IMG/VR virus record: IMGVR_UViG_3300020188_000808
Span: 203,784 to 267,783 of that record
Length of the DNA: 64,000 nucleotides
Direction: 5' to 3' (one strand)
How positions within the stretch are numbered: the first letter of the stretch is position 1; every line of letters starts with the position of its first letter. The notes below the pieces were generated by a model. The model was not told the DNA's origin, did no database searches, and was given only the letters and a program-made list of their open reading frames with translations. Below are positions 4,462-63,831 of the stretch, in pieces. A program made the position numbers and the translations under genes.

Positions 4462-4464
4462 TGA

Positions 4465-50704: not shown

Positions 50705-51256
50705 CTAAATTGACGAATTAACTGGACCATAATTTTTAGTAGTCATTGCTTTTAAAGGATTGGCTCCTAGACTTAGTGTAACTCTTGGACCTAGTATTAA
50801 AGGTTTATGATTTGTAAGTCTTGGTAAAAGCAAAGCATCACCAGTTCTACAATGATAAATTTCTTTGTTCATTGTGTCTGCATCTGTTACAAGATATGCA
50901 GTTTCACCGTATCCTTGTATAAGCAAAACAGTTTCATAATCATTGTGTAAGAATAAACTGTTATGTCCGTCACTTAATGAATAAAATAAACTAGCATTAA
51001 AATGCCCTTCAGTTTCGTGTCTTTCATAATGCTTTTGAAACTCTAACAAATATTTTTGTATACGCTTGTCTGATCCTATGTCAGAAATATGTGTACTGCC
51101 TTTTACAAATTCATCTACATTTGATACTGTAGATTTATATTGATTTATTTCTACTAGTGTTGTAAAATTAATATCGTCTAGTGCATCTGGAAATGCATTT
51201 TTGTAATGTGCTACCTTAAGATTTTTACGATCTTCGTTTATTTGGTCCCAAATCAT
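50705..51256 (-). CDS. JmjC/cupin-like 2OG oxygenase
   Basis: HND..VLLIQGYG...GDALLLPR...H...PRVTLS. Confidence 0.7.
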   Translation of the reverse strand: MIWDQINEDRKNLKVAHYKNAFPDALDDINFTTLVEINQYKSTVSNVDEFVKGSTHISDIGSDKRIQKYLLEFQKHYERHETEGHFNASLFYSLSDGHNSLFLHNDYETVLLIQGYGETAYLVTDADTMNKEIYHCRTGDALLLPRLTNHKPLILGPRVTLSLGANPLKAMTTKNYGPVNSSI

Positions 51257-51264
51257 TTTAATTC

Positions 51265-51714
51265 CTATCCTTCATAGATCGCTGAGTTTGCTCCGTGTTC
51301 GGCACATTCTACCTTTACACAATAACAACGACCGTCTGTTGCTTCACGAATCAGTTTGTCAGCAAAGTAAAATGCGTGTTCTGCAAACTTCTCTGCACCT
51401 ACACCGCCAAACTCTCTTACTTCACACAAGCCTTTGTCTTGTAGATCATAAAAGTCTTGTTTGTGCGGATCGTTAAAGTCTACACAAGTCTTATGATCAA
51501 AACTATCTTCTAACCAAGCCTTCAAAGGCTTTAGTCCGCCAAAGTCGACTGCCCAGTTTTTATTGTCTAGATGATCACATCCAAATGTAAATGTAAATGC
51601 TAGACTGTAACCGTGTAGCAAATGGCAATGTGAATGATCTGCGTTAGGTTGTCTAAAGACTGCCGAAAGACCAATGTTGTGTCCGTAATGTTTTGTACTA
51701 TAATGTTTTCCCAT
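51265..51714 (-). CDS. queD: 6-carboxytetrahydropterin / 6-pyruvoyltetrahydropterin synthase
   Basis: CHLLHGYS, VDFG.LK, FDHK, E.GANSA.Y. Confidence 0.88.
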   Translation of the reverse strand: MGKHYSTKHYGHNIGLSAVFRQPNADHSHCHLLHGYSLAFTFTFGCDHLDNKNWAVDFGGLKPLKAWLEDSFDHKTCVDFNDPHKQDFYDLQDKGLCEVREFGGVGAEKFAEHAFYFADKLIREATDGRCYCVKVECAEHGANSAIYEG

Positions 51715-51793
51715 AATATTCTCCTACTATAATGTTTTTTTTATGGGCGGCAGAGTTAGAAGGGTTGACGCCAAGTCCTTTATTCATGTATAT

Positions 51794-51822
51794 ATTATAT
51801 ATGAGTTTTGTTTACTTGTCAA
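51794..51822 (-). promoter_or_regulatory. sigma70-type promoter of queD
   Basis: TTGACA-17-TATAAT. Confidence 0.85.
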
Positions 51823-52423
51823 GTGTTTTGTGGTGTGTATTAAAACTCATTGTTATCCGTTTTTCAGTTGGATTTGGTTTTGTATAATGATACAACCAAC
51901 TTGGAAATAATATTAAGAATCCTGTCCTAACATCAAATTCCATTTCGTCTGCTGTGTATTCTGTTGCTTTAGCATGTATTTCAGACATCTTAGGACCAAG
52001 TATTGGACTTTTAAATATTAATGGAGAACTGTTTGGTTCAACAAATGGATAATATGCTCCACTGACAATACTTAGTTCGTGTCTGTGTAAATCTACACGA
52101 CCGTCAAGTTGTTGTGCATTTAACCAACTTTTTGATATTTCGGTATATTCTAAGCCTGCATGAAAACAATATTCATTGATACACATTTGTATATCGTCTT
52201 TAATTTTAAATCTGTCAAGCACGTTCATTTCTAATTGACTAGTAGTTTTTCCTTTACCAATCTCTTCAGGCCAATCGGTAACATTATTAGATTCAACGTA
52301 GTCTAATATTTCTTTATTGCTTGGATGGTCGTTTAAGTTATAAACTTGTACTAGTGTAGGAAAGATTGGATAGTCTGCTTTCCTAAACGGTCCATCAACT
52401 ATCTGTGCTTTCATGTGGGTCAA
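51812..52423 (-). CDS. 2OG-Fe(II) oxygenase
   Basis: HRH..SIVSGAYYP...FPSWLYH...KRITMSFN. Confidence 0.85.
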   Translation of the reverse strand: MTHMKAQIVDGPFRKADYPIFPTLVQVYNLNDHPSNKEILDYVESNNVTDWPEEIGKGKTTSQLEMNVLDRFKIKDDIQMCINEYCFHAGLEYTEISKSWLNAQQLDGRVDLHRHELSIVSGAYYPFVEPNSSPLIFKSPILGPKMSEIHAKATEYTADEMEFDVRTGFLILFPSWLYHYTKPNPTEKRITMSFNTHHKTLDK

Positions 52424-53042
52424 TCCTATAATCTCTTATTTTTGCATACGCGGCTCTGTCACTGTGTCGAATAGTATTAAAACTAACTGTGTATCGTTTT
52501 TCTGTTGTGTTTGACGGCACATGATGTCGCATCCAGCTTGGAAATAAACATAGCAATCCTGTTTTAGGATAACATTCTAATTCATATCTATTGTAGTCTG
52601 TTAGTCCTAGTGCTGAATAGTTCATAAAGTTTACTTGATTAGGGTTTTCAAAAACCAAAGGCGCACTACCTCCATCTACATAAGGATAGTATGCTCCGCT
52701 GACAATACTTCTTTCATGTCGATGTGCATCTACTTGTCCGTTCTGATATAACGAGTTAAACCAACTAGTTGATATTAGAGTGTAATCAACACCAAGATGT
52801 TGTGTATAAATGTCAACACATTCTTGTATAGTTTTCCAAAGGTTAGTTAGTCTTTTATCATTAAGGAACTGTTCATCTCCTGTGATGTAACTACTCTGTC
52901 CTTCGTGTACTAGTTTATGGTCACCAAATTTTGTATACGTGTTAATCATTTCCATTACAGTATTTTCATCAGGATGTCCTTCGATGTCAAATGTTGTAAC
53001 TAAACTTGGAAACGCATTATGGTGTGCAGGCTCTAACTTCAT
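52395..53042 (-). CDS. 2OG-Fe(II) oxygenase, paralogue of the adjacent gene
   Basis: HRH..SIVSGAYYP...FPSWMRH...KRYTVSFN. Confidence 0.85.
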   Translation of the reverse strand: MKLEPAHHNAFPSLVTTFDIEGHPDENTVMEMINTYTKFGDHKLVHEGQSSYITGDEQFLNDKRLTNLWKTIQECVDIYTQHLGVDYTLISTSWFNSLYQNGQVDAHRHERSIVSGAYYPYVDGGSAPLVFENPNQVNFMNYSALGLTDYNRYELECYPKTGLLCLFPSWMRHHVPSNTTEKRYTVSFNTIRHSDRAAYAKIRDYRIDPHESTDS

Positions 53043-53593
53043 TTAAGTTCCTCTAAATCTAAATTCTTTATGTTACTATACTTATCTGGCCATTTTTTTG
53101 TAGAGTAATAATTGAATGTAATATCAGGAAAGTGTTCAAATACTTTGTTTATTTGGTATATCCAATAACTTGGGTCAACTGGTCTAGCAGTTGATTTGCT
53201 GTAGTTTTTAGTATCCTTGTAAATATTTCCATGGTACAAATCAAACCCTACTAGGTTAACTGGTTCTCTCCATTCATATGCTAATCTTGCTCCAATTAGC
53301 ACAGCAAAAGGACCACTGCCCCAATGCCAAGGATCATCTGGTCTTGCTGTACCTCTGTAAGGTAAGTCAGGTAAACACTCAACTCCTTTGAAATCTTTAA
53401 ACCAGTCTTTACGAGTATATAAACTGCCCTTAAATGTGTTTGCTTCTAGTACTTCTTTAACCATTCGCTTGTCGCAACAGACTAGATGATCTACTGTATA
53501 ATCTCTATACAGGGCATTACATCCTACTTTAGTATCTCTAATCAGATCTAAATCAATGTTATATCTAGTTTCACCGTTGCCAATTACAAGCAT
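53039..53593 (-). CDS. CstII/Maf-like (GT42/DUF115-fold) putative CMP-sugar transferase
   Basis: Start MLVIGNGETR at 53593; GCNALY, SG..A...A, LVGFDLY parallel CstII IAGNGPS / RCNQFY / TSG / LSGIDFY. Confidence 0.55.
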   Translation of the reverse strand: MLVIGNGETRYNIDLDLIRDTKVGCNALYRDYTVDHLVCCDKRMVKEVLEANTFKGSLYTRKDWFKDFKGVECLPDLPYRGTARPDDPWHWGSGPFAVLIGARLAYEWREPVNLVGFDLYHGNIYKDTKNYSKSTARPVDPSYWIYQINKVFEHFPDITFNYYSTKKWPDKYSNIKNLDLEELK

Positions 53594-53598
53594 AACAT

Positions 53599-53611
53599 TA
53601 TTTAATAAATA
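53599..53611. promoter_or_regulatory. Overlapping divergent late promoters
   Basis: ATTAAATA on minus (53599-53606) and AATAAATA on plus (53604-53611). Confidence 0.6.
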
Positions 53612-53638
53612 CAATATACAAAAGGAACAAATACGAAC

Positions 53639-56020
53639 ATGACTGCATACTACGATTTTTTCAGATACGTTAAACTATATTCCCCTGACGGAACAACATT
53701 AGAAGCTACTGTAGAAGCTGATAGTGTTACAGATAGTATTAATTTTGTTAGAGGAAACGGTGTTGCTTGGAACACAGTTGATGTCGGTACAGACACGTTT
53801 AAATTTGATGTCGATTACAGTCTTAGTATTCCATTAGCAAGTACAGATATAACACTTACTGACGTTAATAATGCAACCTCAACAATCAGTTTAGTTGCAG
53901 GTGGTAATATGATTATTACTAGAGATAATGCAAATCAATTAACTATTGCGGCATTGGTTGGCGGTGTTAGTAAATCAATTCAAAACATTACAACAACTAA
54001 CCCAGTTGTAATTACAACAACAAATGCACACGCATTCACTGATGGTACAGAAGTAACTATTGTTGATGTTGTTGGAACTACACAGCTTAACGGTAACGAA
54101 TACTTCATGGACGTACAAACTAGTGACACGTTTGCTTTGTACACAGATGCACAATTAACAACACCATTAGACGGCACAGCATTTACAGCATATGTCAGTG
54201 GCGGAGTTGCTACTGCTGATTACGGTGGAGCAAAGAACGCATTTAAAACTATTCAGGTAACAGGTCAAAGTCCTGTTGTTGCTGACAACATTCAAGATAT
54301 TTTAAACCTAACAGGTGGAACAGGTATTGACATTACAACAACACCTGGAACAGACTCTATTGCATGGGCGATAGACAATACAGTAACAACACTTGCAGAT
54401 GCACAAACTTTACTAAACAAAACTTTAACATCTCCAATCATTGCGGCAATTAAACCAAGTGCAAGTAATTCATGGTCATTGCCTGATAGTAACGATACAT
54501 TTGTAGGTAAAGCTACAACAGACACGTTTACTAACAAGAGTGTTGACTTAACAAATAATACACTAACGACAACTATAGCACAATTGAATACAGCCGTTAG
54601 TGACGAAACAGTAGTAGCTAGAGATACAACAGACACACTTACAAACAAGTCAATTAGTTTAACTGATAATACAGTAACAGGTACAATAGCAGAACTTAAT
54701 ACCGCAGTTAGTGATGAAACTGTAGTAGGTAGAGATACAACTGATACACTTACAAATAAAAGTATTGATCTAACTGATAATACTGTAACAGGAACCTTTG
54801 CGGAATTTAATACTGCGGTTAGTGACGAAACACTTGTTGGACTTGATGCATCACAAACATTAACAGCTAAAACGCTAACTGATCCTATTCTATCTCCTAC
54901 TGCTACAACAGCAGGTAAGATTGAGTTTTTAGAAGGAACAGACAACGGTACTAACAAAGCAACACTAATAGGTCCTGCAAGTACTGCTGATGTAACTATT
55001 ACATTGCCAGCCGCAACAGATACACTAGTTGGTAAAGCAACAACAGATACATTTACAAATAAAAGCGGTAGTAATAGTCAGTGGACAAATGATGAAGCAT
55101 ATATTAAAGCTGACACAAGTGACACACTTACAAACAAGTCAATTAGTTTAACAACTAATACTGTAACAGGTACACTTGTAGAATTTAATACTGCGGTTAG
55201 TGATGCTACTCTTGTTTCAACAACAGGTATAGAAACCCTTACTAACAAAACTTTAACATCTCCGACCTTTAGTGGAACAGCAACATCATTCACTTCAACA
55301 GGTATTGATGACAATGCAACAAGCACATCTATCACTATAGATTCATCACAGAGTGTAGGTATTGGCGGAGCACCAGTAGCTCTTAGTGGAAATGCTACCC
55401 CAGGATTAACACTTACTTCAAATGGTCCTTTTATACTTTTAAAAGATGCAAACAACGCAAATAAAACAACATACATTTCTAATAATAGTGGGGTACTTCA
55501 ATTTGGTATAGTTGATGATGATGGCGTAACAAATAAAACTGAACATATGCAGATTACTGATACAGGTACAGTACAAGTAGCGTCAGCCGCAAATTTTGAA
55601 ACTCCTAATATTACAGGATCCATTCCAGGCATGACATTTGTTATGACTATTGGGGGAATTACAACGATAGGTGATGGTGCAACAACTGTTACAAGATATG
55701 CTACTCCAGGAAATGATTGGCAAGCAAATTTAGCCATAGGTACTAGCATGCCAGTTACTAGCAATATGAAATGTGTTGCAATGTCTGTTCTTTGTGATGG
55801 TGTGCTAACTGTTGGTTCTTCAAATGTAACACTTATGAAAAACGGTGTTGATACAACAACATCTGTTACCTTTGCTAATGGAGATGGCGGAACTGGTGAT
55901 GTAAAACAAAGCACAGTAAATAATAGCTTTGACGCTGGTGACAGAGTAGGAATCAAAGTAGTCACACTATCAGCAACTGCTAGAGCATACCTTGTTATGA
56001 CTCAGTGGGAATTAATTTAA
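53639..56020 (+). CDS. Thr-rich accessory tail fibre/virion protein
   Basis: FCCH-like domain (ITTTNPVVITTTNAH...GTTQLNG), TLTNK repeats, TLPAATDTLV; lone plus-strand structural gene. Confidence 0.75.
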   Translation: MTAYYDFFRYVKLYSPDGTTLEATVEADSVTDSINFVRGNGVAWNTVDVGTDTFKFDVDYSLSIPLASTDITLTDVNNATSTISLVAGGNMIITRDNANQLTIAALVGGVSKSIQNITTTNPVVITTTNAHAFTDGTEVTIVDVVGTTQLNGNEYFMDVQTSDTFALYTDAQLTTPLDGTAFTAYVSGGVATADYGGAKNAFKTIQVTGQSPVVADNIQDILNLTGGTGIDITTTPGTDSIAWAIDNTVTTLADAQTLLNKTLTSPIIAAIKPSASNSWSLPDSNDTFVGKATTDTFTNKSVDLTNNTLTTTIAQLNTAVSDETVVARDTTDTLTNKSISLTDNTVTGTIAELNTAVSDETVVGRDTTDTLTNKSIDLTDNTVTGTFAEFNTAVSDETLVGLDASQTLTAKTLTDPILSPTATTAGKIEFLEGTDNGTNKATLIGPASTADVTITLPAATDTLVGKATTDTFTNKSGSNSQWTNDEAYIKADTSDTLTNKSISLTTNTVTGTLVEFNTAVSDATLVSTTGIETLTNKTLTSPTFSGTATSFTSTGIDDNATSTSITIDSSQSVGIGGAPVALSGNATPGLTLTSNGPFILLKDANNANKTTYISNNSGVLQFGIVDDDGVTNKTEHMQITDTGTVQVASAANFETPNITGSIPGMTFVMTIGGITTIGDGATTVTRYATPGNDWQANLAIGTSMPVTSNMKCVAMSVLCDGVLTVGSSNVTLMKNGVDTTTSVTFANGDGGTGDVKQSTVNNSFDAGDRVGIKVVTLSATARAYLVMTQWELI
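54515..55225 (+). repeat. 37-aa (111-bp) repeats in the fibre gene
   Basis: TxDTxTNKSxxLTxNTxTxTxxxxNTAVSD units at 54515, 54626 and 54737, plus a fourth at 55115. Confidence 0.85.
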
Positions 56021-56496
56021 TTTTTAGGATTAACGATTAATAAAATATTATCGTATGTTTGTGATTTTTCAGTTTGGAAGATTAGATAGTTGCATACAAA
56101 GTTACCTGTCATGCTAACACGGTATTCTCCACCCGCCATCATATCGTTTGGAACAGCCATTGTCCATTGATTAGGAATAGGTTCTCCAGGGCGTGTGTTA
56201 CGAGTGTATTGTTTTGTAAACTTGTCTAATCTATGCGTATGTCCATCTTTATGATATGCTACACCATACACTTCTGTACTATTACATTCATGCTTTTTAG
56301 AGCCTATCATCATAAACTCTATATCGTCGTGCTGTTCAATTGGGTTGTTTACTATTTCAATTTTAACATCTTGGAATACAAAAGCGTTATTAAAACTCAT
56401 ATATGCAATACCTAGCACAATGATAGTCATTAAACTTAGTCCACTGACTACATTTGCTATTGCACGTAATAGGATGAATTTTTGATTACTTGTCAT
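56017..56496 (-). CDS. Single-TM protein with a two-Cys soluble domain
   Basis: Probable start MTSNQKF at 56496; N-terminal TM; KHEC...FVCN. Confidence 0.6.
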   Translation of the reverse strand: MTSNQKFILLRAIANVVSGLSLMTIIVLGIAYMSFNNAFVFQDVKIEIVNNPIEQHDDIEFMMIGSKKHECNSTEVYGVAYHKDGHTHRLDKFTKQYTRNTRPGEPIPNQWTMAVPNDMMAGGEYRVSMTGNFVCNYLIFQTEKSQTYDNILLIVNPKN

Positions 56497-56821
56497 TTCT
56501 AACTTTTCTAAGTTCTTTTTTAATTCTACTAAATTCAACGTGAACTTCATATAAATTATTACTTGCCCTCTGTAAGGTATTTATTAATGATTTGATTGTA
56601 AACAGAGTCCAAAACCACCAAGTTACGGCTGTCACAGCAAATGATCCTACTCCCCACCAAAATGCTTGGGCAAAGGTTATAGTATTAAAAAGAAGCAATA
56701 CTCCAGTAATCGTTAGAAATGCTGTTGGGATTACTTTCGCATAGATATCCCACAGTTCTACCTGTTTTTTAATCTTTTCTTCTATTCTCTTTTGTTGTTC
56801 TAGTTCTTGTTTTTTCATCAA
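56486..56821 (-). CDS. 2-TM membrane protein with coiled-coil tail
   Basis: Two TM helices; ATTAAATA promoter at 56851-56858. Confidence 0.65.
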   Translation of the reverse strand: MMKKQELEQQKRIEEKIKKQVELWDIYAKVIPTAFLTITGVLLLFNTITFAQAFWWGVGSFAVTAVTWWFWTLFTIKSLINTLQRASNNLYEVHVEFSRIKKELRKVRNDK

Positions 56822-56887
56822 TAGTTGCCTTTACTGTGTTCTCTACAGTATATTTAATCTAGTTAGGTGATAAATTAAAGCAGACTA

Positions 56888-58015
56888 TTAAGAACTAATA
56901 GTGCCAAATGGCTTCCATTCGCCTGGCGTTCCTTCTCTAATACATACCCACCCTACATATCCTGTTGGAGTTGGCTCTGTATTAAAAATTAGATCTCCTC
57001 TAGTGTAAATTCCGTTAGTTGGAAGTTGATCACTAAATTCAATTTTCTTACCTTGCACTTTAATTGGTGATGCAACACTTAATGCTGTATCAGGATTATT
57101 AATTCCAATACCTACATTACCTTTGAAAGTTGTAACAGTATTAGAATCAGTACCAACTTCAATTTTGTTGGTAGATTTAAGTTTAATTCTTGTAACATCG
57201 TCAGTTACTAGCTCTAAGTCGTGTGTAGTATATGATCCAGTTTTAATACTATCAAACCCAGGCTCAACGATATATTCTGCTTCATTGCTGGCTACACTTA
57301 GTTGTCCGTTTGGAGCATCTATACCTATTCCTAATCTCATTCCATCTCCGTCATAGAAGATAAACTGATCAATATTCATATTGCCTTCGGTTCTTAAATT
57401 TCTAAGTGTACCTACGCTAGTTAGATTAGAATGTGTTATGCCTGCGCCAAGTGTGTCTGAACTTAGTACTGAAACATTGCCAATCATATAATGCTTTGCA
57501 TCATGTAAGTCCAACGACTCACTACTCCATAGTCTTTCGGAGTTGGCTTGCATTACTAGTTGTTTGGTATGACCGTACCCGGTCCACATTAGACCTTTTC
57601 CAAATGGGGTATCTTGTTCACTACATTTAAATTCTAATGGACTTGTTCTTTCAAGTCTAACGTCAGCATTAATTTCTACTGCATCAATACGTTGAGCAGT
57701 GATGATTCCGCCAACCTGTAAATTCTTTTCAACTTTAATATCCCCTTTGAGTTCAACAGCATCAATGTAGTCTACAACAATTCTATCATCTTTAACAAGT
57801 AAACTTACTTTAGATGCTTGGTCGTATATACCAACACTTTTAAATGCTGAGATAGTACCTCCGTGTACTAAGTCACCTGTAATTGAATCGTTGGGCATAC
57901 CCTCTACTGTTGGAACTGATTGCTCTCGTTGTGAGATAGTTTCAATTGCATTAGCGAGTTGTGTCAACCCATTTTTAATTACTAAAAGGTCATTATCTGG
58001 AATATTACTGTTCAT
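56888..58015 (-). CDS. Putative virion fibre/spike protein
   Basis: SNLTSVGTL, GNVGIG..NP, C-terminal GD.IFN.EP...GYVGWVC...GTPG.WKPFG. Confidence 0.7.
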   Translation of the reverse strand: MNSNIPDNDLLVIKNGLTQLANAIETISQREQSVPTVEGMPNDSITGDLVHGGTISAFKSVGIYDQASKVSLLVKDDRIVVDYIDAVELKGDIKVEKNLQVGGIITAQRIDAVEINADVRLERTSPLEFKCSEQDTPFGKGLMWTGYGHTKQLVMQANSERLWSSESLDLHDAKHYMIGNVSVLSSDTLGAGITHSNLTSVGTLRNLRTEGNMNIDQFIFYDGDGMRLGIGIDAPNGQLSVASNEAEYIVEPGFDSIKTGSYTTHDLELVTDDVTRIKLKSTNKIEVGTDSNTVTTFKGNVGIGINNPDTALSVASPIKVQGKKIEFSDQLPTNGIYTRGDLIFNTEPTPTGYVGWVCIREGTPGEWKPFGTISS

Positions 58016-58020
58016 ACTAT

Positions 58021-58028
58021 TATTTATC
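58021..58028 (-). promoter_or_regulatory. Late promoter GATAAATA
   Basis: 5 nt before the ATG at 58015. Confidence 0.7.
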
Positions 58029-58037
58029 CAGAACAGT

Positions 58038-59321
58038 TTACTGAACGACTTTTAACAAAATAGTATCTTGATTAATACGACCATTAAGTTTGATGTCTAC
58101 AGCATTGATTTCGTCTAAGAATGTCTTAACTTTTCGTGACCCAGCTTGTTTAAATTCTTCAAGTTTCTCTTCAGGTTTACGTAGTGTTTTTTGTACACTA
58201 AGGGATTCGTTGAAGTTAATAATAGTAGTACCTTTGATACTAAGTCCACTACCTTCACGTCCTTGACGCATAGGATCTAAGTTCTGTGCAATATAACGTC
58301 CAAGTTTCCGTGTTTTAATATTAAACACCCAAAGCTCACTTGCAAATATAATATCTTGTGGATTAATACTTGCTAGTTTAAACTTATCATCAGTATGAGC
58401 ATACTTTAGTTTAGTAACCATTTTTTCTTTGCTTAACACACGTTTGCGAGGCTTACGTGTTGCTTTAGCAGTTTGAATAATAACGTCTAATGACCCCATT
58501 AGTAGTTTGAGACTGTCTAACTTACGTTTAAGTGCTTTAGTAGAATAAATTGCATATGCCTCTTTATACTGTGCATATGTTTCTTGATCATATTCACTCA
58601 TTTTAGCAAGTTCAGCTTTGCTAGGAAAGTTTACAACTCCATCAAGTTCTTCAATTTCTCCTATATAGAAATCTCTAATCTTTCGAGCATGTGCTTGAGT
58701 GCATTGCGAGTCTCTAAGATGTTTGCTAATATCAAATTCTCTAGGATTAAACTTCTCCATTTCGTCCATCCATTTTTCTAACCATATGTCAATCTTTTCA
58801 GACATTATAATTGACTGCTCATAAATTCGTTGTTGGATAGTTGGCTTGTATACTGTAGATTCTTCTTCTTGTTTTTTCTTAGTTTCTTCAACAACTAGAG
58901 AACCACGTGCATACAGCTCTTTTAGTGTCTTTTCAACAAACTCGGAGAATGGCTTTACTGTACCCATAGTACCAGCAAGGCTAATCCAATGTTCGTTGTA
59001 TGCAGGGTGTACATCTGGCATACCATTTGATAGCATTCTACACAATCCACCAATGGTAGGACCAAAACAATTATCTGGAAGTTTTTGAACTACTGTTGCT
59101 TTATCCTTCCATTTAGAGTTATCTAACATCCATTGCTTAACCCAGAGCTTATAGTCTGAACTTTTAAATTCCATGCGATAATAATCATTTGCAGAATTTT
59201 TCAATCGACCAAAAGTTGGACCGTCAAGTTCAAGAGCACCTTCAAACGAAGGTTCGTTGTTCTTGTTGCTTATTCGGCGAGCAACTGGCTTTTTTCTTTT
59301 TGGACCTTTTGGAATGGCCAT
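58038..59321 (-). CDS. Hypothetical phage protein
   Basis: 427 aa; LWVFNIKTRKLG.Y...IKGTTI..F...KTLRKPEE...NGRIN; TTGACT-16-TATAGT at 59355-59382. Confidence 0.7.
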   Translation of the reverse strand: MAIPKGPKRKKPVARRISNKNNEPSFEGALELDGPTFGRLKNSANDYYRMEFKSSDYKLWVKQWMLDNSKWKDKATVVQKLPDNCFGPTIGGLCRMLSNGMPDVHPAYNEHWISLAGTMGTVKPFSEFVEKTLKELYARGSLVVEETKKKQEEESTVYKPTIQQRIYEQSIIMSEKIDIWLEKWMDEMEKFNPREFDISKHLRDSQCTQAHARKIRDFYIGEIEELDGVVNFPSKAELAKMSEYDQETYAQYKEAYAIYSTKALKRKLDSLKLLMGSLDVIIQTAKATRKPRKRVLSKEKMVTKLKYAHTDDKFKLASINPQDIIFASELWVFNIKTRKLGRYIAQNLDPMRQGREGSGLSIKGTTIINFNESLSVQKTLRKPEEKLEEFKQAGSRKVKTFLDEINAVDIKLNGRINQDTILLKVVQ

Positions 59322-59404
59322 TATCTAAACTCCTCTAATTTCTATGTAATCATAACTATATAGCAAAAAGATATAAAGTCAACTAAAAATGGTGGTTCGT
59401 GTTA

Positions 59405-60733
59405 TCAAAGTTTTTCGTTAGACTCAAAGCCACGGAACGTTTTAAATCTTGGAAAACGTAAACTATACGTTTCACTATCTTGTGATTTAGTACGAGCATC
59501 TGCCCTAATTTCAATTAGCTGACCAATGAGACTAGCACGTTCAGTCCAGTACTCATCACGTTGAGAGTCAGTGAAACCGCTCCCACAGTTAAGGCGATAA
59601 TTGTATCCATCGTCTTCTCCTTCTACTATTACGGCACCTAGTCTTCCCGCATTACGTCCAGTGCCTTCTTCAACGTCTACGACTTTTAGTGTAATTTCAA
59701 TAAATGGTTTTGCCTTTAACCAAGCATGAGTTCTTTTGCATTCATAGGGTGCATCAACATCTTTGATCATAACCCCTTCGTAACCACCGTCTACAGCCGT
59801 CTTATTAAGCTCTACAAAGCGTTGTTCGCCTTCAGGAGTACTTAGGTCTACATCTTCCCATTCAAGTGCTTGTACGTGCTTTAAAACAGCTTGATTACTT
59901 TCAACCCAATGTTTGGTTATTGCACTTCTTGTTGACTGTGGTTTATCCCAACCACCTTCTTTGAAATTGGATAGTGGAATAGTATCAAATAAATGTAATA
60001 CTGCATCTTTGGCTGTACCACCGCTCTTTCTATGTACCTGCTTCATAAGGTCCTGAAAGTTAGCACTCATTACTTCACCGTCTAACACAAGGTCATATGG
60101 TGCAGGATTATCTTTGAGTACTGTTTTAATTTCTTCAATAATGTGATCAAAGTTATGAAACTGTTTACCATTACGACTAAACATTTCTACCTTATCACCT
60201 TGAATAATTGTAATAACACGAACGCCATCTAACTTAACTTCAATTTGTTTCTTACCAACCATCTTCTTTTCGTGGTTAGCAGAGTCATGTGCTAATGCAC
60301 AAGTAAATGTAGGAATTGTATATTGTGGAAACTTCTTTGCAATTTTGTTTACTGTTTTTTCTGAAACACCACAACGTAGATCTTTTATAAGTATTCTACG
60401 ATAGAACATGTTCCATTGTTCTGCGGTTGCTAGATCTTTACAAAGTATAATTGCATCTCTAGCATTATGCCCTGTAAGTTGTCTGTCAATTAATTTACGT
60501 GCTAGTTCTTTGAATGTAGGCCAAGCAAGACCTTGTGGCGTAAGTACTTCATTTTCTTCTTTTTCAGGTACTTGTTTTACACCAAAAGTAACAAGTGGAT
60601 CAAGTGCCATACGTACACCTTCAAAGAACTGATCTAGTCCTTCTTCCATTGCTTCTAAGATAACTTGTTCTTTTGCTAGGCGACTGTTGTCTGCCTCTAA
60701 TTTTGAAATAATTTCTTGTGGTTGTGTTCTCAT
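59405..60733 (-). CDS. ATP-dependent DNA ligase
   Basis: EVKLDGVR (motif I), SRNGK, LDGE, EGVMIK, WLKAK, SLRFPRF. Confidence 0.95.
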   Translation of the reverse strand: MRTQPQEIISKLEADNSRLAKEQVILEAMEEGLDQFFEGVRMALDPLVTFGVKQVPEKEENEVLTPQGLAWPTFKELARKLIDRQLTGHNARDAIILCKDLATAEQWNMFYRRILIKDLRCGVSEKTVNKIAKKFPQYTIPTFTCALAHDSANHEKKMVGKKQIEVKLDGVRVITIIQGDKVEMFSRNGKQFHNFDHIIEEIKTVLKDNPAPYDLVLDGEVMSANFQDLMKQVHRKSGGTAKDAVLHLFDTIPLSNFKEGGWDKPQSTRSAITKHWVESNQAVLKHVQALEWEDVDLSTPEGEQRFVELNKTAVDGGYEGVMIKDVDAPYECKRTHAWLKAKPFIEITLKVVDVEEGTGRNAGRLGAVIVEGEDDGYNYRLNCGSGFTDSQRDEYWTERASLIGQLIEIRADARTKSQDSETYSLRFPRFKTFRGFESNEKL

Positions 60734-60772
60734 ATTGTGCCTCTGTTGCCTTTATAATTAATTCTTATGTAT

Positions 60773-60801
60773 ATAATACAGTCAAATGTGGCTTGTGTCA
60801 A
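60773..60801 (-). promoter_or_regulatory. sigma70-type promoter of the ligase gene
   Basis: TTGACA-17-TATTAT. Confidence 0.75.
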
Positions 60802-60814
60802 CCTTTTTGTTTAT

Positions 60815-60891
60815 TGGCGCACCCGAAAGGATTCGAACCTCTGACCCCAACTTCCGCAAAGTTGTGCTCTATCCAGCTGAGCTACGGGTGC
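60815..60891 (-). tRNA. tRNA-Arg, anticodon GCG, CCA encoded
   Basis: Full cloverleaf: GCACCCG-TA-GCTC-AGCTGGATA-GAGC-A-CAACT-TTGCGGA-AGTTG-GGGTC-AGAGG-TTCGAAT-CCTTT-CGGGTGC-GCCA. Confidence 0.93.
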
Positions 60892-60899
60892 GTAAATGA

Positions 60900-60932
60900 A
60901 AACAGGCGACACAATTTAATGAGCCGCCTGCT
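60900..60932 (-). terminator. Hairpin / terminator-like element between 60956 and the tRNA
   Basis: AGCAGGCGGCTCA-TTAAAT-TGTGTCGCCTGTT followed by TT. Confidence 0.55.
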
Positions 60933-60955
60933 TTCTAGTAAAAACTAACGTTATA

Positions 60956-61204
60956 TTAGTTTACTAAACCTTTTGCAAGTGCTTTGTAACCAGCGGCTAC
61001 GATTGCTCTTGAAGGTGTTCCCAATCTGTACTTCTTAACACCATTTTTCTTAGTGTTTAGATACACAGGATGACCTGCGAATCTTAGTGATTGGATTACA
61101 GCTTGAGGATTACCTGCTTTGAATCTTGATTTAAGTTCAGCTGAGGTATACTCTTTACCTGATTGAAGTGCAGTTAATACACTATCTTGAATTGTCGTTT
61201 TCAT
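60956..61204 (-). CDS. Small winged-HTH DNA-binding protein
   Basis: VLTALQSG...T..ELKSRF..NP.A.I..LR..GHPVY...YRLG. Confidence 0.65.
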   Translation of the reverse strand: MKTTIQDSVLTALQSGKEYTSAELKSRFKAGNPQAVIQSLRFAGHPVYLNTKKNGVKKYRLGTPSRAIVAAGYKALAKGLVN

Positions 61205-61268
61205 ATATTTTCTCCTTATAAGTTTAAAACGTCTTAACTTTAAGCATTTACAGCTCTAAGTTATTAAT

Positions 61269-61297
61269 AGTATAACAGAATTAGTTTATAAAGTCAA
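61269..61297 (-). promoter_or_regulatory. sigma70-type promoter
   Basis: TTGACT-17-TATACT. Confidence 0.75.
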
Positions 61298-61313
61298 ACA
61301 GTTATGTTACCAA

Positions 61314-61901
61314 TTATACAAAATCGGGTCCATGCACCCATCCTACAATACTTTTGCGGATGCCTTTAGTGACAGGAGTTACCTTGTGTGGCAACCAACT
61401 TGGAAAGAAACAGATCTCATGTTTTTGTAAATCTGTTTGGAGACCTTGAAAATCTGGCATTAATAATAACTCGCCACCTTCAAAATCTTTTGGATCACTA
61501 AGAAGAATACTAAAAGATATCTTTCGAACCTGGCCGTGTTGTCCTTTAAAAGCCCCGTCCGAATGTGTTTCGTAGTGTCCTTTTTTGTCAGCATCATAAA
61601 CACCATACTGACAAGGTTCTAAATCTGTAATTGCATATTTAAATAATGTGTTGTTTGCATAATGAATAACATTACCAAGTAGTGCATAAAATTCTGGGTG
61701 CATACGAGTATCAATCCAATCAATGTCTGTACTACGGATTGATGTGTCGTCATCATGCTGATCGTCTGTAATATATCTTGCAGGTCGAACTTCCATTGAT
61801 TCTTCAATGCTGTCAACCATTTCCTGTGTAAGTCCCCATTCTTGTAACTTATAATAAGGAAACGGATTGTTTCGTATGTTAGGCGGAGTTAGTTGATACA
61901 T
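61314..61901 (-). CDS. Prolyl-hydroxylase-like 2OG-Fe(II) oxygenase
   Basis: HSD...RKIS...FEGGEL...FPSWLPHKVTPVTKG.RKS. Confidence 0.88.
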   Translation of the reverse strand: MYQLTPPNIRNNPFPYYKLQEWGLTQEMVDSIEESMEVRPARYITDDQHDDDTSIRSTDIDWIDTRMHPEFYALLGNVIHYANNTLFKYAITDLEPCQYGVYDADKKGHYETHSDGAFKGQHGQVRKISFSILLSDPKDFEGGELLLMPDFQGLQTDLQKHEICFFPSWLPHKVTPVTKGIRKSIVGWVHGPDFV

Positions 61902-62416
61902 TATTTAAACCTCGCTTGTATAGTTACTCTTGTTTGTTTAGCCCACGGAGTGATAGCACTCACACTATGTTGTGTTGGGTGTTGTCTATTGTCATTAAGT
62001 ATTAATCTATTAAATTTTGGCTCTTGTGCTAGTATCTTGTCATCTTCTTTATACAAGAACAATCCGCCGTCTGCTGAATCCCAATGTTGATTAAGGTAAA
62101 TTGTACCACTTGCTATATACCCTGCATCGTCATGCCAGTCTAACATACTGTTCCTATTCCACAAGTATATAAATGCTTCAAATTTTAGATCACTGTAGAA
62201 TGGATTTAAGTTTACAAATTGTTTGCGTAATTCTTTATGTGTATTATCTGACACTGGACTCATGTTAGCACTATTTGCACCTTCAACAACAATACCTTCC
62301 CAACTGTGACTGGTAGCCCAAACAGCTTCTGACGACTGGATTTTTGTTTTAATCTCAGTTGCTATGCTGTCAATTAATTTTTGACTTAGGAAATTATCTT
62401 CTACGAGTATTGCCAT
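61901..62416 (-). CDS. 2OG-Fe(II) oxygenase
   Basis: WHDD...IYLN..W...GG...H.VS...RVTIQ. Confidence 0.85.
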   Translation of the reverse strand: MAILVEDNFLSQKLIDSIATEIKTKIQSSEAVWATSHSWEGIVVEGANSANMSPVSDNTHKELRKQFVNLNPFYSDLKFEAFIYLWNRNSMLDWHDDAGYIASGTIYLNQHWDSADGGLFLYKEDDKILAQEPKFNRLILNDNRQHPTQHSVSAITPWAKQTRVTIQARFK

Positions 62417-63089
62417 TTAGTTTGTTCCATTGTTCTAATTCTTCTGGTGTGTTAATTTCCATTCCGCTAAACTCACAAGGAAGTACACCAATATTCCATC
62501 CGTTCTTTAACCAACGAAGCTGTTCTAAACTTTCGTGGCGTTCTTCTTTTGTAACAATTAAGTTATCGTATTGTTCTAATGCTTTACGTTTGTAACCGTA
62601 AATACCTAAATGCCAATCACCGTAGCCAGTCATGCCTCTCCCAAACCATAAACACTTACCTGCACCTCTAACTAGTTTAACTGTGTGAGGGTCGTTCTGT
62701 TTTTCTTCTGGCATCATTGCACACATTGTGGACACATCATAGTCTTTTAAGTTACTTAATGTTCCTTCAATCATATCTAGTGTAACATCGGGCATGTCGC
62801 CTTGTACGTTAATAAATGTATCGTACTTGCTAAAAAACTCGTGCTTAACTGCACCTGCACACCGTTCTGTGCCGTTTGCATAATCCTTTTGTTCAATAAA
62901 ACATGTGTCAGCATTGAACTGATTGTACACTTGCATACTGTCAGTTAGTACATATGTTGGTATCTTAGACGCAATACAAGCGTCATACACACGTCTAATC
63001 ATAGTCTTAGCACCCAACATAGCTAGTGGTTTGCCCGGTAAGCGTGTACTAGCAAATCTAGCCGGTATAAGAATAGCTGTGGATTTCAT
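62394..63089 (-). CDS. kdsB: CMP-KDO synthetase (3-deoxy-manno-octulosonate cytidylyltransferase)
   Basis: IPARFASTRLPGKPL, GTER, NVQGD.P, HLGIYGY, LEQLRWL. Confidence 0.93.
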   Translation of the reverse strand: MKSTAILIPARFASTRLPGKPLAMLGAKTMIRRVYDACIASKIPTYVLTDSMQVYNQFNADTCFIEQKDYANGTERCAGAVKHEFFSKYDTFINVQGDMPDVTLDMIEGTLSNLKDYDVSTMCAMMPEEKQNDPHTVKLVRGAGKCLWFGRGMTGYGDWHLGIYGYKRKALEQYDNLIVTKEERHESLEQLRWLKNGWNIGVLPCEFSGMEINTPEELEQWNKLNGNTRRR

Positions 63090-63831
63090 CTACTACCCTT
63101 TCAAAATCATTTAGTTTTAACATATTAGGCCCATCGCTAGGTGCATTGTCTGGGTCGTCGTGTACTTCTAAGAAAAAGTTTGTTACACCTAGAGCGGAAG
63201 CGGCACGAGACAAGCCAGGCACATACCCGCGATTGCCGCCACTACTATCGCCGTTACCCCCTGGCTTTTGTACCGAGTGAGTAACATCATAAACGATAGG
63301 AACGCTATAATTATCAAGCATATACTGAATGCCGGTGAAGTCAGTAACCAAAGTATTGTATCCAAAACTAGTACCCCTTTCTGTGATCCATACTTCTTTA
63401 GCACCTTCTGTTTTGCTTAATATGCCGTTGACGTCCCAAGGTGCAAGGAACTGTCCTTTTTTAATATTAACAATTTTGTCTGTTTCACATACCGCTTGTA
63501 TCAAATCAGTTTGCCTACAAAGGAATGCAGGTATTTGTAATACATCTACTGCATCATTAAAATATTCTGTAATCTTTTCAATTTGATCAATGTCATGTAC
63601 GTCAGTAAGTGTCAAACAATCTACATTATCTTTAATAATATTAAAATCATTTAGAGTATTAACAAGTCCAACACCACGCTTACCTTGCATACTACTTCTA
63701 TTGGCTTTATCAAAACTTGCTTTGAATATATATTCTATATCATACTTTCTACATACATCTGCACAATGTTGTGCAATCATTAAACTATGTTCTAACGATT
63801 CGTGTTGGCATGGTCCTGCAATAATTCTCAT
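63058..63831 (-). CDS. kdsA: KDO 8-phosphate synthase (metal-dependent type)
   Basis: AGPC, FKASFDKANRSS, QIPAFLCRQTDL, NIKKGQF, ERG, DVTHSVQ, SDG. Confidence 0.95.
   Translation of the reverse strand: MRIIAGPCQHESLEHSLMIAQHCADVCRKYDIEYIFKASFDKANRSSMQGKRGVGLVNTLNDFNIIKDNVDCLTLTDVHDIDQIEKITEYFNDAVDVLQIPAFLCRQTDLIQAVCETDKIVNIKKGQFLAPWDVNGILSKTEGAKEVWITERGTSFGYNTLVTDFTGIQYMLDNYSVPIVYDVTHSVQKPGGNGDSSGGNRGYVPGLSRAASALGVTNFFLEVHDDPDNAPSDGPNMLKLNDFERVVDEIHSYSYTG

What the first reader, a model, noticed from the sequence alone, without database searches (positions are those of the whole stretch)
53039..63831. Candidate phage KDO-glycosylation system: kdsA/kdsB plus a CstII/Maf-like transferase back-to-back with a Thr-rich fibre
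Seen: kdsA and kdsB. ORF 53039-53593 carries the motif series IGNG / GCN.LY / SG..A / GFDLY. It shares overlapping divergent late promoters (53599-53611) with a very Thr-rich fibre gene, the only plus-strand structural gene here. Known: KdsB makes CMP-KDO; CstII (GT42) and flagellin Maf transferases use CMP-ulosonic acids, and Maf acts on Ser/Thr. Inference: rather than boosting host LPS, the phage may make CMP-KDO to O-glycosylate its own fibres or to alter host surface receptors. Caveats: the same fold includes MptE-like pterin kinases and queD is nearby; kdsC and kdsD are not visible in this window.
Basis: inference. Interest (0 to 1): 0.72.

Follow-up and report, generated by a model that had tools for sequence, protein, structure and literature searches.

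The report
Phage sialyltransferase-like enzyme beside a fibre gene
A large uncultured T4-like phage carries a small, unannotated enzyme shaped like bacterial sialic-acid transferases, placed back-to-back with a threonine-rich tail-fibre gene and 9 kb from genes that make activated KDO sugar, so it may sugar-coat virion proteins, but the tie to KDO is optional across relatives and nothing is shown biochemically.

Summary
The observations hold. kdsA passes the KDO-8-P synthase models. kdsB is KdsB-like but scores below the curated cut-offs. ORF 53039-53593 carries the stated motifs. The fibre is 19.8% Thr. The 13-mer at 53599-53611 is identical in the 20 relatives I printed that share the divergent layout.

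The ORF belongs to a virus-only family with no Pfam match (more than 1000 proteins). Its profile hits CstII (GT42) at E=5e-8. Its AF2 model (pLDDT 97) aligns best to Maf (Z 12.1) and CstII/CstI (Z about 10.4), ahead of MptE HPPK (Z 8.7).

The gene is a core, syntenic gene of a clade of roughly 360-kb T4-like phages. A second conserved paralog sits between the portal and prohead-protease genes.

The kdsB co-occurrence test mostly fails. None of 20 related records has a CMP-sugar synthetase. Outside phages with kdsAB lack the family. A complete 357-kb relative keeps kdsAB more than 70 kb from either copy. Against that, close relatives keep kdsA-kdsB in place, and at least two unrelated kdsA lineages sit one gene from this ORF.

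Best reading (about 0.35): a late-expressed CMP-ulosonic-acid-type transferase acting on virion proteins, with kdsAB as an optional donor supply. Donor and acceptor are inferred. kdsAB in a cyanophage is already published.

The parts
53039..53593 (-). GT42/Maf/DUF115-like single-domain enzyme, 184 aa ('GT42L-A'). It is the first gene of a co-directional run of overlapping genes.
   Evidence: No Pfam or NCBIfam hit. PHROG 30607, function unknown. The family has more than 1000 proteins and 641 clusters at 50% identity. Profile against the PDB: CstII at E=5e-8. AF2 pLDDT 97. Fold matches.
53599..53611 (.). Conserved 13-mer TATTTAATAAATA in the 45-bp divergent spacer. It reads as a late-type box AATAAATA toward the fibre, overlapping ATTAAATA toward GT42L-A.
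   Evidence: Identical in all 20 divergent-arrangement loci printed, while the flanks vary. The spacer is fixed at 43-48 bp. ATAAATA is under-represented in the window.
53639..56020 (+). Thr-rich (19.8%) fibre-like structural protein, 793 aa. It has an N-terminal E1_FCCH-like domain and seven T[LF]T[NA]K[ST] repeat motifs (mostly TDTLTNKS).
   Evidence: Pfam E1_FCCH at E=1.7e-6, just below the cut-off; PHROG 692, virion structural protein. Composition and repeats. Homologues range from 706 to 1400 aa and share the N-terminus.
52395..53042 (-). 2OG-Fe(II) oxygenase (Oxy_5 type). Its start overlaps the stop of GT42L-A.
   Evidence: PF13759 at E=2.3e-18.
51812..52423 (-). Second 2OG-Fe(II) oxygenase (Oxy_5 type).
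   Evidence: PF13759 at E=1.2e-16.
51265..51714 (-). QueD-type PTPS (6-carboxytetrahydropterin synthase-like). Its motif is CHLLHGY.
   Evidence: PF01242 at E=5.6e-12. Sequence. Motif rules from PMC5041015. Nearest phage homologues are QueD-like genes at 47-55% identity. Found beside GT42L in 73 of 80 loci.
50705..51256 (-). JmjC/cupin-like protein.
   Evidence: PF08007 at E=1e-4.
49991..50692 (-). GT8-like glycosyltransferase.
   Evidence: PHROG 1962, glycosyltransferase, E=3.4e-30. PF01501 at E=2e-6. Co-located with GT42L in 79 of 80 loci.
49111..49839 (-). HAD-IIB phosphomannomutase-like sugar-phosphate enzyme. It is a possible stand-in for the missing KDO-8-P phosphatase; that role is inference only.
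   Evidence: PF03332 at E=1.5e-24; TIGR01484. Follows GT8 in every kdsA-containing block.
56888..58015 (-). Tail-fibre-like structural protein (o375) with its own exact late box GATAAATA.
   Evidence: PHROG tail-fibre and virion-protein hits. Promoter. Syntenic in 73 of 80 loci.
58038..59321 (-). Conserved protein of unknown function (o427), a syntenic partner.
   Evidence: PHROG 11903 at E=3e-47. Present in 68 of 80 loci.
61314..62416 (-). Two tandem 2OG-Fe(II) oxygenases (Oxy_3 type) directly downstream of kdsB.
   Evidence: PF13640. The same order is kept in L087-L089 and L126.
62394..63089 (-). KdsB-like CMP-KDO synthetase.
   Evidence: PF02348 at E=3.9e-23. Every NCBIfam hit is a KdsB model, all below cut-off. 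It is the only CTP_transf_3 gene in the contig.
63058..63831 (-). KdsA, KDO-8-phosphate synthase.
   Evidence: NF003543 at 333.7 bits and TIGR01362 at 322.7 bits, both above their cut-offs.

Best explanation
ORF 53039-53593 encodes a minimal (184-aa) one-domain transferase of the GT42 / Maf / DUF115 superfamily. It is a virus-specific core gene of a clade of roughly 360-kb T4-like phages.

It is transcribed with the late (structural) genes. In this lineage the promoter is a conserved bidirectional element shared with a variable, Thr-rich fibre gene. A second conserved paralog sits inside the head-morphogenesis module.

Most likely mechanism: like its nearest characterised relatives, it takes a CMP-activated ulosonic acid and transfers it to hydroxyl groups of virion proteins (the fibre for this copy, head proteins for the paralog) in the infected cell. 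The donor normally comes from the host pool. In lineages that carry kdsA/kdsB, as here, the phage tops up CMP-KDO itself.

What is shown: the fold, the family relationship, the synteny, the promoter conservation, the identity of KdsA, and a KdsB-like cytidylyltransferase overlapping it. What is inferred: transferase activity, the donor, the acceptor and the timing.
For: **Fold and family**
- The profile hits CstII, CstI and 9c08 at E=5e-8 to 1e-5.
- The top 12 Foldseek hits are all GT42 chains. Maf scores Z 12.1 and CstII Z 10.5, with 159-174 of 184 residues aligned, against 128 residues for MptE.
- Three of the four characterised activities in this superfamily use CMP-ulosonic acids: CstI/II, Maf and WaaZ. 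WaaZ hits PF01973 at E=7e-7 and carries PF01973 plus PF27901 in the precomputed annotation.
- The nucleotide-loop motifs GNGxS, xCN, SG and G(F/I)D line up with those of CstII.
- Two near-invariant Tyr residues (Y125, Y131) lie in the loop that corresponds to the CstII lid. From memory, the CstII lid holds Tyr156 and Tyr162.

**Phage-specific, late, structural context**
- Nearly every named relative is viral. The atlas lists the family's clusters as 96-100% Viruses.
- The 13-mer is conserved, and exact late boxes precede the fibre, o375 and o177.
- The paralog lies between gp20 portal and x319, gp21, gp22, gp23 in this genome and in three relatives.
- The neighbours are fibre-like proteins and a GT8-like glycosyltransferase.

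**KDO link**
- kdsA-kdsB lie 9 kb away here and in relatives at 78-80% identity.
- The block GT42L, PTPS, kdsA, (kdsB), GT8, PMM recurs in KdsA lineages that are at least two independent placements on the tree.
- The contig has no WaaA-type KDO transferase.

**Transcripts:** in one salt-marsh metatranscriptome run the contigs break exactly at the spacer, with equal depth on both sides.
Against: - No biochemical or proteomic data exist.
- kdsB is absent from 20 of 20 related records. kdsAB also occurs in phages without the family. So KDO cannot be the family's general phage-encoded donor.
- The PTPS|GT8 junction also takes other inserts (jmjC), so it may simply be an insertion hot spot. Gene overlaps in that block extend to UvdE, an unrelated DNA-repair gene.
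- The fibre is adjacent in only about a third of loci.
- In pelagiphage HTVC008M the three family members lie among replication and recombination genes.
- CstII's catalytic His188 aligns with Pro141. That column is Pro in 52 of 87 sequences and His in 9 of 87.
- hhalign against the WaaZ family is not significant: probability 3.8%, E 0.011.
- The box facing the ORF has one mismatch and leaves almost no leader.
- The metatranscriptome contigs may contain DNA. In three of the four runs they bridge the spacer.
Confidence: 0.35

Rival explanations
1. The enzyme is the same kind of ulosonic-acid transferase, but the acceptor is a host surface glycan (LPS core or capsule), as with CstII and WaaZ. The phage remodels the cell surface late in infection, for example to block superinfection or to keep progeny from re-adsorbing. 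kdsAB supply the donor.
For: All characterised GT42 and GT73 enzymes act on LOS or LPS (PMC5811610). kdsAB in the cyanophage S-SCSM2R were interpreted as cell-wall synthesis and modification genes (PMC12801897). Elsewhere kdsAB sit in sugar-nucleotide islands with an epimerase and a UDP-glucose dehydrogenase. GT8- and PMM-like genes lie nearby.
Against: The family is virus-specific and has no close bacterial homologues, unlike typical host-derived auxiliary genes. It lacks the C-terminal membrane-association region of CstII: 184 aa against 259-291 aa. One paralog is embedded in the head module.
Confidence: 0.2
2. kdsA/kdsB and the GT42-like gene are functionally unrelated. kdsAB is a mobile auxiliary cassette that boosts host LPS precursor supply and lands at variable sites. 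Its nearness to the GT42-like gene reflects insertion hot spots. This reading is compatible with any function for the ORF.
For: None of 20 related records has kdsB, and 2 of 20 have kdsA. Only 7 of 19 kdsA-bearing records carry the family, and in the complete 357-kb genome the two are more than 70 kb apart. More than 560 viral kdsA relatives exist, most in other contexts. The same junction holds jmjC in this phage.
Against: At least two distinct KdsA lineages occupy the same slot, one gene from the ORF. In L100 and L103 kdsA, kdsB, GT8 and PMM overlap one another directly after GT42L and PTPS. No other KDO transferase candidate was found in the contig.
Confidence: 0.4
3. The protein is an MptE / thiamin-pyrophosphokinase-like pyrophosphokinase. 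It works with the neighbouring PTPS and the phage's GTP cyclohydrolase I on a pterin or a related small molecule.
For: MptE HPPK scores Z 8.7 and TPK Z 8.3. Eleven of 87 members hit PF01973 weakly, and one 435-aa relative hits it at E=4e-13. PTPS is adjacent in 73 of 80 loci. FolE is present at G000:191273-191761.
Against: Sequence and structure are closer to GT42 and Maf. The PTPS has the QueD-type CxxxHG motif and lacks the PTPS-III Glu, and its nearest homologues are QueD genes of 7-deazaguanine phages, so no hydroxymethylpterin substrate is expected. There is no FolP. Two or three paralogs per genome, in head and replication modules, do not fit a single metabolic step. Synteny across the block also includes a ligase and UvdE, so adjacency is weak evidence.
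Confidence: 0.12
4. The enzyme glycosylates or otherwise derivatises phage DNA or nucleotides, as in the hypermodification pathways of other T4-like phages.
For: T4-like phages use phage glycosyltransferases together with sugar-nucleotide genes to hypermodify DNA (PMC13326640). In HTVC008M and Mosig the family sits beside gp59, gp32, UvsY and helicase genes, with 2OG oxygenases and a carbamoyltransferase.
Against: The 268-kb contig has no ThyA or dCMP-hydroxymethylase homologue, no TGT/DpdA and no QueC. The 2OG oxygenases are Oxy_5 and Oxy_3 types with no match to other Pfam families. No known DNA glycosyltransferase has this fold (my knowledge).
Confidence: 0.08

Closest known systems
CstII / CstI of Campylobacter jejuni and the Pasteurella multocida LOS alpha-2,3-sialyltransferase 9c08 (CAZy GT42)
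   Same: It is the best sequence-profile match (E=5e-8 to 1e-5) and supplies the top Foldseek hits, with Z 9.0-10.5. The order of the nucleotide-site motifs is shared: GNGxS, xCN, (T/G)SG, G(I/F)D.
   Different: It is about 100 residues shorter and has no C-terminal membrane-association region. TM-score is only 0.5-0.57. The catalytic His188 aligns with Pro141. It has its own hallmark motif NNxYKxTxNY. It is virus-specific. Donor and acceptor are unknown.
Maf flagellin nonulosonic-acid transferase (PDB 5mu5; Pfam PF01973 / DUF115)
   Same: It is the best structural match (Z 12.1, 159 residues aligned to the central domain). Maf modifies Ser/Thr of a secreted filament protein, the closest functional analogy for a fibre-modifying enzyme.
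   Different: There is no significant sequence match to 5mu5. Maf has large flanking domains (632 aa). Only 11 of 87 family members touch PF01973, and weakly.
WaaZ, KDO III transferase (CAZy GT73; Pfam PF27901 plus PF01973)
   Same: It belongs to the same superfamily and is a documented CMP-KDO transferase (PMC5811610). This shows the fold can use CMP-KDO.
   Different: The profile-profile match is not significant (probability 3.8%). WaaZ is 283 aa, enterobacterial and acts on the LPS inner core.
MptE archaeal 6-hydroxymethyl-dihydropterin pyrophosphokinase (PDB 8sd5) and thiamin pyrophosphokinase
   Same: They share the Rossmann-like core (Z 8.7 and 8.3). A pterin-pathway gene (PTPS) lies next door.
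   Different: Fewer residues align (128). There is no sequence hit. The neighbouring PTPS is QueD-type, not the HMDHP-forming type.
kdsA/kdsB of Synechococcus phage S-SCSM2R (PMC12801897)
   Same: It is a T4-like marine phage with an adjacent KdsA and KdsB (30-40% identity). The authors read them as cell-wall synthesis and modification genes.
   Different: S-SCSM2R has no member of the GT42-like family. Its kdsA and kdsB are convergent rather than co-directional, and they sit in a photosynthesis and auxiliary-gene region.

Membership tests
CAZy GT42 (CstI/CstII sialyltransferases) | Significant sequence similarity to characterised GT42 enzymes | tested here: met
   The family profile A2 hits nine distinct sequences (CstII variants, CstI, 9c08) at E=5e-8 to 1e-5. 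The window protein alone has no Pfam CST-I hit, and 6 of 87 relatives hit it weakly.
CAZy GT42 (CstI/CstII sialyltransferases) | GT-A-variant single Rossmann fold with a lid | tested here: met
   AF2 pLDDT 97. Foldseek probability 1.0 with TMq 0.50-0.57. VIA Z 9.0-10.5 over 152-174 residues.
CAZy GT42 (CstI/CstII sialyltransferases) | Catalytic base His188 (CstII numbering) | tested here: not met
   In the HMM alignment His188 falls on Pro141 of the D-P-x-Y-W motif. That column is Pro in 52, His in 9 and Tyr in 7 of 87 sequences; the head-module paralog has His.
CAZy GT42 (CstI/CstII sialyltransferases) | Transfer from CMP-Neu5Ac | not testable with these tools
   This needs an enzyme assay.
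Maf / DUF115 (Pfam PF01973) | Match to PF01973 above the gathering score | tested here: not met
   The window protein has no hit. Eleven of 87 relatives hit at best E=2e-4. One 435-aa relative passes with 49.9 bits against 34.6.
Maf / DUF115 (Pfam PF01973) | Structural similarity to the Maf central transferase domain | tested here: met
   5mu5 scores Z 12.1 with rmsd 3.6 over 159 residues, the top hit.
WaaZ KDO III transferase (GT73, PF27901) | Profile-level homology to WaaZ | tested here: not met
   hhalign of A2 against the WaaZ alignment A4 gives probability 3.8% and E 0.011. The precomputed Pfam for family members is empty, whereas WaaZ carries PF01973 and PF27901.
MptE-type HPPK | Pathway partner that makes 6-hydroxymethyl-dihydropterin (PTPS-III with ExxHGH, or FolB), and a downstream FolP | tested here: not met
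   The PTPS motif is CHLLHGY, which is QueD-like and lacks the Glu. Its nearest homologues are QueD genes. There is no Pterin_bind gene.
KdsA (KDO-8-P synthase) | Equivalog HMM above its cut-off | tested here: met
   NF003543 scores 333.7 against 242, and TIGR01362 scores 322.7 against 314.
KdsB (CMP-KDO synthetase) | Equivalog or subfamily HMM above its cut-off | tested here: inconclusive
   All five NCBIfam hits are KdsB models, but all fall below cut-off (best 163.5 against 193). Pfam CTP_transf_3 is passed. The gene overlaps kdsA.
Complete KDO pathway (KdsD, KdsA, KdsC, KdsB, transferase) | KdsD (SIS), KdsC and a WaaA-type transferase are present | tested here: not met
   None was found in the 268-kb contig, which is 75% complete. 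A HAD-IIB PMM-like gene could substitute for KdsC; that is inference.
T4-type late promoter | A (T/N)ATAAATA box at a suitable distance upstream, conserved among relatives | tested here: met
   For the fibre there is an exact AATAAATA 27 nt upstream of the ATG, and the box was identical in all 20 loci printed. For the ORF the box is ATTAAATA (one mismatch), 5 nt from the ATG, so that side is inconclusive. Transcript 5' ends were not mapped.

The most novel reading that the evidence does not exclude
A large clade of uncultured roughly 360-kb T4-like phages O-glycosylates its own virion proteins with KDO or another CMP-activated ulosonic acid. The Thr-rich fibres would be modified by one paralog and head proteins by the other, using a previously unrecognised, minimal, virus-specific branch of the GT42/Maf superfamily. 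Some lineages encode KdsA/KdsB to feed it. This would be the first ulosonic-acid protein glycosylation in a phage and a new acceptor class for KDO.
Probability: 0.15. Interest if true: 0.85.

Novelty: new variant of a known kind. Interest (0 to 1): 0.55.

Why it matters
If the enzyme decorates virions with an acidic sugar, it would add a post-translational layer to host recognition, particle stability and grazing or immune evasion in abundant environmental phages. It would also show that 'LPS-type' auxiliary genes such as kdsAB can serve the virion rather than the host envelope.

Independently of the mechanism, the work gives a large, unannotated, virus-only protein family (more than 1000 members, no Pfam) a fold and a testable activity. 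It also shows that the family has two conserved paralogs embedded in structural modules of a poorly known jumbo T4-like clade.

Tried and rejected
- **Complex prediction.** Complex prediction of the full fibre with the ORF returned no verdict: score 0.00 and the controls were not run. I do not use it as evidence either way.
- **Narrow profile.** The closer-family profile A1 found nothing in the PDB. Only the broad profile A2 reaches GT42.
- **WaaZ homology.** hhalign against a single WaaZ sequence and against the WaaZ family was not significant.
- **PF27901.** The WaaZ_KDO_III model is not in the local Pfam copy.
- **Atlas fold search.** It returned only the family's own viral clusters.
- **Nucleotide search.** Megablast of the region against the phage collection found nothing. 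Tblastn of the ORF found only the pelagiphages HTVC008M and Mosig.
- **Broad-alignment locus search.** The search for related loci with A2 failed for lack of a conserved peptide, so I used A1.
- **Domain fusions.** The 3668-aa hit P0254 is a repetitive Ig/PKD surface protein and a spurious partial match. The longer relatives of 230-290 aa have no added Pfam domain.
- **Pterin-kinase idea.** I examined it and down-weighted it.
- **DNA-modification idea.** I examined it and down-weighted it.
- **Metatranscriptomes.** Contigs from RNA libraries cover the region at 99% identity or more, but contigs have no strand and may include DNA. Only one of four runs shows the break at the spacer.
- **Literature.** I found no paper on DUF115 or GT42-like proteins in phages.

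Full report
**Setting.** The window is bases 203,784-267,783 of a 267,783-bp IMG/VR viral contig that CheckV rates 75% complete. GC is about 36%. The genome is T4-like. It has gp20 portal, gp21 protease and gp23 capsid, a baseplate-wedge/fibre connector and T4-type fibre proteins, and a family-B DNA polymerase. No psbA was found. Completeness estimates for relatives, and one complete relative of 357,559 bp, put the clade's genome size near 360 kb. Salt-marsh metatranscriptome runs hold the region at 99% identity or more.

**Observation check.**
- kdsA (63058-63831) passes both KDO-8-P synthase equivalog models.
- The overlapping gene at 62394-63089 passes Pfam CTP_transf_3. Its only NCBIfam hits are KdsB models, and all are below the curated cut-offs. 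It is the only cytidylyltransferase of that type in the contig.
- Searches for KdsC, a SIS-domain KdsD and WaaA found nothing in the contig.
- The target ORF starts at the ATG at 53593 and carries the four motifs. These are among the most conserved columns of the family.
- The fibre is 19.8% Thr, against 5-6% for enzymes and 10-13% for other fibres. It has seven T[LF]T[NA]K[ST] repeat motifs, mostly TDTLTNKS.
- The 45-bp divergent spacer holds TATTTAATAAATA at 53599-53611. This 13-mer is identical in all 20 divergent-arrangement loci I printed, whose GT42-like proteins are 50-100% identical, while the surrounding spacer varies. The spacer length is fixed at 43-48 bp.
- Toward the fibre the 13-mer gives the late-type box AATAAATA 27 nt before the ATG, with a Shine-Dalgarno. 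Toward the ORF it gives ATTAAATA, 5 nt before the ATG.
- ATAAATA is under-represented in the window. In the 48-64 kb region it occurs only here and upstream of two structural-type genes, o375 and o177.
- The ligase and UvdE genes instead have sigma-70-like TTGACA-N17-TATAAT-type boxes.

**What the ORF is.**
- It has no Pfam or NCBIfam hit and one PHROG of unknown function.
- It belongs to a large family: more than 1000 proteins at 90% clustering and 641 clusters at 50%. Members are about 190 aa, and the atlas labels the clusters 96-100% viral.
- A profile of 87 diverse members hits nine distinct GT42 sequences (CstII variants, CstI and the Pasteurella LOS sialyltransferase) at E=5e-8 to 1e-5, and nothing else credible.
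- The AlphaFold2 model is very confident, with pLDDT 97 and pTM 0.93.
- The top 12 Foldseek hits are all GT42 chains. Maf ranks 13 and MptE HPPK ranks 47.
- VIA-align gives Maf Z 12.1, CstII 10.5, CstI 10.4, 9c08 9.0, MptE 8.7 and thiamin pyrophosphokinase 8.3.
- The protein is a stripped-down version, about 100 residues shorter than CstII. CstII's catalytic His188 aligns with Pro141, a column that is His in only 9 of 87 members.
- The family-wide invariants are GNGxSR, GCNA, RD, D41, E47, W-x-SG, GFD and the hallmark NNxYKxTxNY.
- E. coli WaaZ, the KDO III transferase (GT73), hits PF01973 and so shares the superfamily. This shows the scaffold can use CMP-KDO. Direct profile-profile similarity to WaaZ is not significant.

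**Genomic context across relatives.** A scan of IMG/VR found 582 relatives, of which I fetched the best 80 with 10-kb flanks. The gene sits in a strongly conserved block: ligase, o427, o375, (o111), [fibre], GT42L, [2OG x2], PTPS, [jmjC or kdsA(B)], GT8, [PMM], UvdE.

| Neighbour of GT42L | Loci out of 80 |
|---|---|
| GT8-like glycosyltransferase | 79 |
| PTPS | 73 |
| o375 | 73 |
| o427 | 68 |
| UvdE | 60 |

- A large divergent Thr-rich fibre (706-1400 aa, 11.5-19.8% Thr) is the upstream neighbour in 22 of 76 evaluable loci, and probably 27 counting truncated cases. The rest have co-directional fibre-like genes or a small divergent ORF.
- The fibre gene varies widely in length across relatives: 343, 793, 810 and 1144 aa.
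- A second family member (36% identical, 200 aa) lies between the portal gene gp20 and an acidic 319-aa protein, followed by gp21, gp22 and gp23. That position is conserved in three relatives, including the complete genome.
- Pelagiphage HTVC008M has three members. They lie beside a Nol-like carbamoyltransferase and 2OG oxygenases, and between UvsY and a helicase.

**The KDO link.**
- *Forward test.* Only the window's own copy has kdsB within 10 kb, and 7 of 80 loci have kdsA. None of the 20 largest related records has any CTP_transf_3 gene, and 2 of 20 have kdsA.
- *Reverse test.* kdsA is common in viral contigs (more than 560 relatives), and 59 of the best 80 have kdsB directly after it. Seven of 19 large kdsA-bearing records carry the GT42-like family. 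These are mainly the large contigs CheckV places near 350 kb. Four records that CheckV completeness puts at roughly 175-210 kb lack it.
- In the complete 357-kb genome, kdsAB is more than 70 kb from either copy. Cultured or deposited phages with kdsAB have no family member. Taken together, the gene does not depend on phage kdsAB, and kdsAB does not depend on it.
- *Counter-evidence.* Relatives at 78-80% identity keep kdsA, kdsB, Oxy3, Oxy3 ... ligase ... fibre and GT42L exactly as here.
- In 16 other loci kdsA, and in L100, L103 and L153 also kdsB, lies between PTPS and GT8, one gene from the ORF. In L100 the genes overlap one another.
- A KdsA tree requires at least two, and most parsimoniously three, independent placements at that junction, one by a deeply divergent lineage.
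- This pattern suggests selection for co-location. It also fits an insertion hot spot, since jmjC occupies the same slot here.

**Rivals.**
However, the PTPS has the QueD-type CxxxHG motif and lacks the PTPS-III Glu (PMC5041015). Its closest phage homologues are QueD genes at 47-55% identity. There is no FolP. The block's synteny also includes unrelated genes.
- *DNA modification.* This is conceivable by analogy with arabinosylated T4-like phages (PMC13326640) and the pelagiphage contexts. But no ThyA or hydroxymethylase homologue, TGT or QueC was found.
- *Host-glycan remodelling.* This fits the precedent of CstII and WaaZ and the published reading of cyanophage kdsAB (PMC12801897). It fits poorly with a virus-only family whose paralog sits in the head module.

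**Verdict.**
- The sequence observations are confirmed and the fold prediction is right.
- The proposed KDO dependence is at best facultative, and the fibre as acceptor is a reasonable but untested guess.
- My preferred reading is a late, phage-specific, CMP-ulosonic-acid-type transferase acting on virion proteins, supplied by host CMP-sugar and, in some lineages, by phage KdsA/KdsB (confidence about 0.35).
- kdsA/kdsB in a T4-like cyanophage has already been published (S-SCSM2R).
- What is new is the recognition of this family, its fold, its two structural-module paralogs and its recurrent neighbourhood with kdsA.

Noticed in passing
G000:C1:101220-101822 (outside the window; L094:9221-9823, - strand): A second member of the GT42-like family (200 aa, 36% identical) lies between gp20 portal and an acidic 319-aa protein, followed by gp21, gp22 and gp23. 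The position is conserved in three relatives. This copy has His at the column that aligns with CstII His188.
   Followed up: yes
L094:8160-9119 (- strand), outside the window: A 319-aa extremely acidic protein with repeats (EATDEEVDESSDDEETN x2) sits between the paralog and the prohead protease. It is probably a prohead core or scaffold component.
   Followed up: no
L044, L069, L074, L078, L079, L084; L099-L101, L108, L109, L120, L121, L124, L127-L130; L100, L103, L153: kdsA, sometimes with kdsB, is inserted at the same PTPS|GT8 junction by KdsA lineages that the tree separates at least twice. In L100 kdsA, kdsB, GT8, PMM and UvdE overlap one another.
   Followed up: yes
window 59405-60733 and 48096-49124 (upstream regions): The DNA ligase and UvdE genes are preceded by near-consensus sigma-70-type boxes (TTGACA-N17-TATTAT and TTGACA-N17-TATAAT). 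The fibre, o375 and o177 have (N)ATAAATA late boxes. Early and late genes are therefore interleaved in this block.
   Followed up: partly
G000:C1:191273-191761 and window 51265-51714: The phage encodes GTP cyclohydrolase I and a QueD-type PTPS whose third zinc-binding His is replaced (CHLLHGY). The contig has no QueC, TGT/DpdA or FolP. This is an incomplete 7-deazaguanine or pterin pathway of unclear purpose. The PTPS is up to 95% identical in phages whose GT42-like protein is only about 54% identical.
   Followed up: partly
window 61314-62416: Two tandem 2OG-Fe(II) oxygenases (Oxy_3 type) directly follow kdsB and travel with kdsAB in relatives. Whether they act on KDO, as the KDO hydroxylase KdoO does, was not tested. 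They do not hit a KdoO model.
   Followed up: no
window 10365-12632 (- strand): A 755-aa protein matches the PHROG 'ATP-dependent protease' at E=2e-242.
   Followed up: no
window 6500-8440 (- strand): A 646-aa protein has an N-terminal cytidylyl/nucleotidyl-transferase-like domain (PHROG 3041 and 395). It is unrelated to KdsB-type CTP_transf_3 and I did not characterise it further.
   Followed up: no
window 33096-34718 and 34745-37195 (- strand): Two tandem paralogous proteins (540 and 816 aa) both match PHROG 9158, function unknown, and hit a 'protease' PHROG more weakly. They lie upstream of the baseplate/fibre connector gene.
   Followed up: no
NC_020484.1 (HTVC008M) 752-1309, 4180-4983, 77489-78319; MT647606.1 108398-109243: Cultured SAR11 myophages carry one to three distant members of the same family, annotated as hypothetical. 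One is followed by a Nol-like carbamoyltransferase and two 2OG oxygenases. These would be tractable systems for testing function.
   Followed up: partly
window 51200-56100 in runs X1-X14: Many salt-marsh metatranscriptome libraries contain this phage at 99% identity or more. In one run the contigs break exactly at the divergent spacer (53577-53633) with equal depth on both sides. DNA carry-over is not excluded.
   Followed up: partly
L166:8067-11417: In a phage fragment without the GT42-like family, kdsA-kdsB follow an NAD-dependent sugar epimerase and a UDP-glucose dehydrogenase. So kdsAB also travel in ordinary sugar-nucleotide islands.
   Followed up: partly
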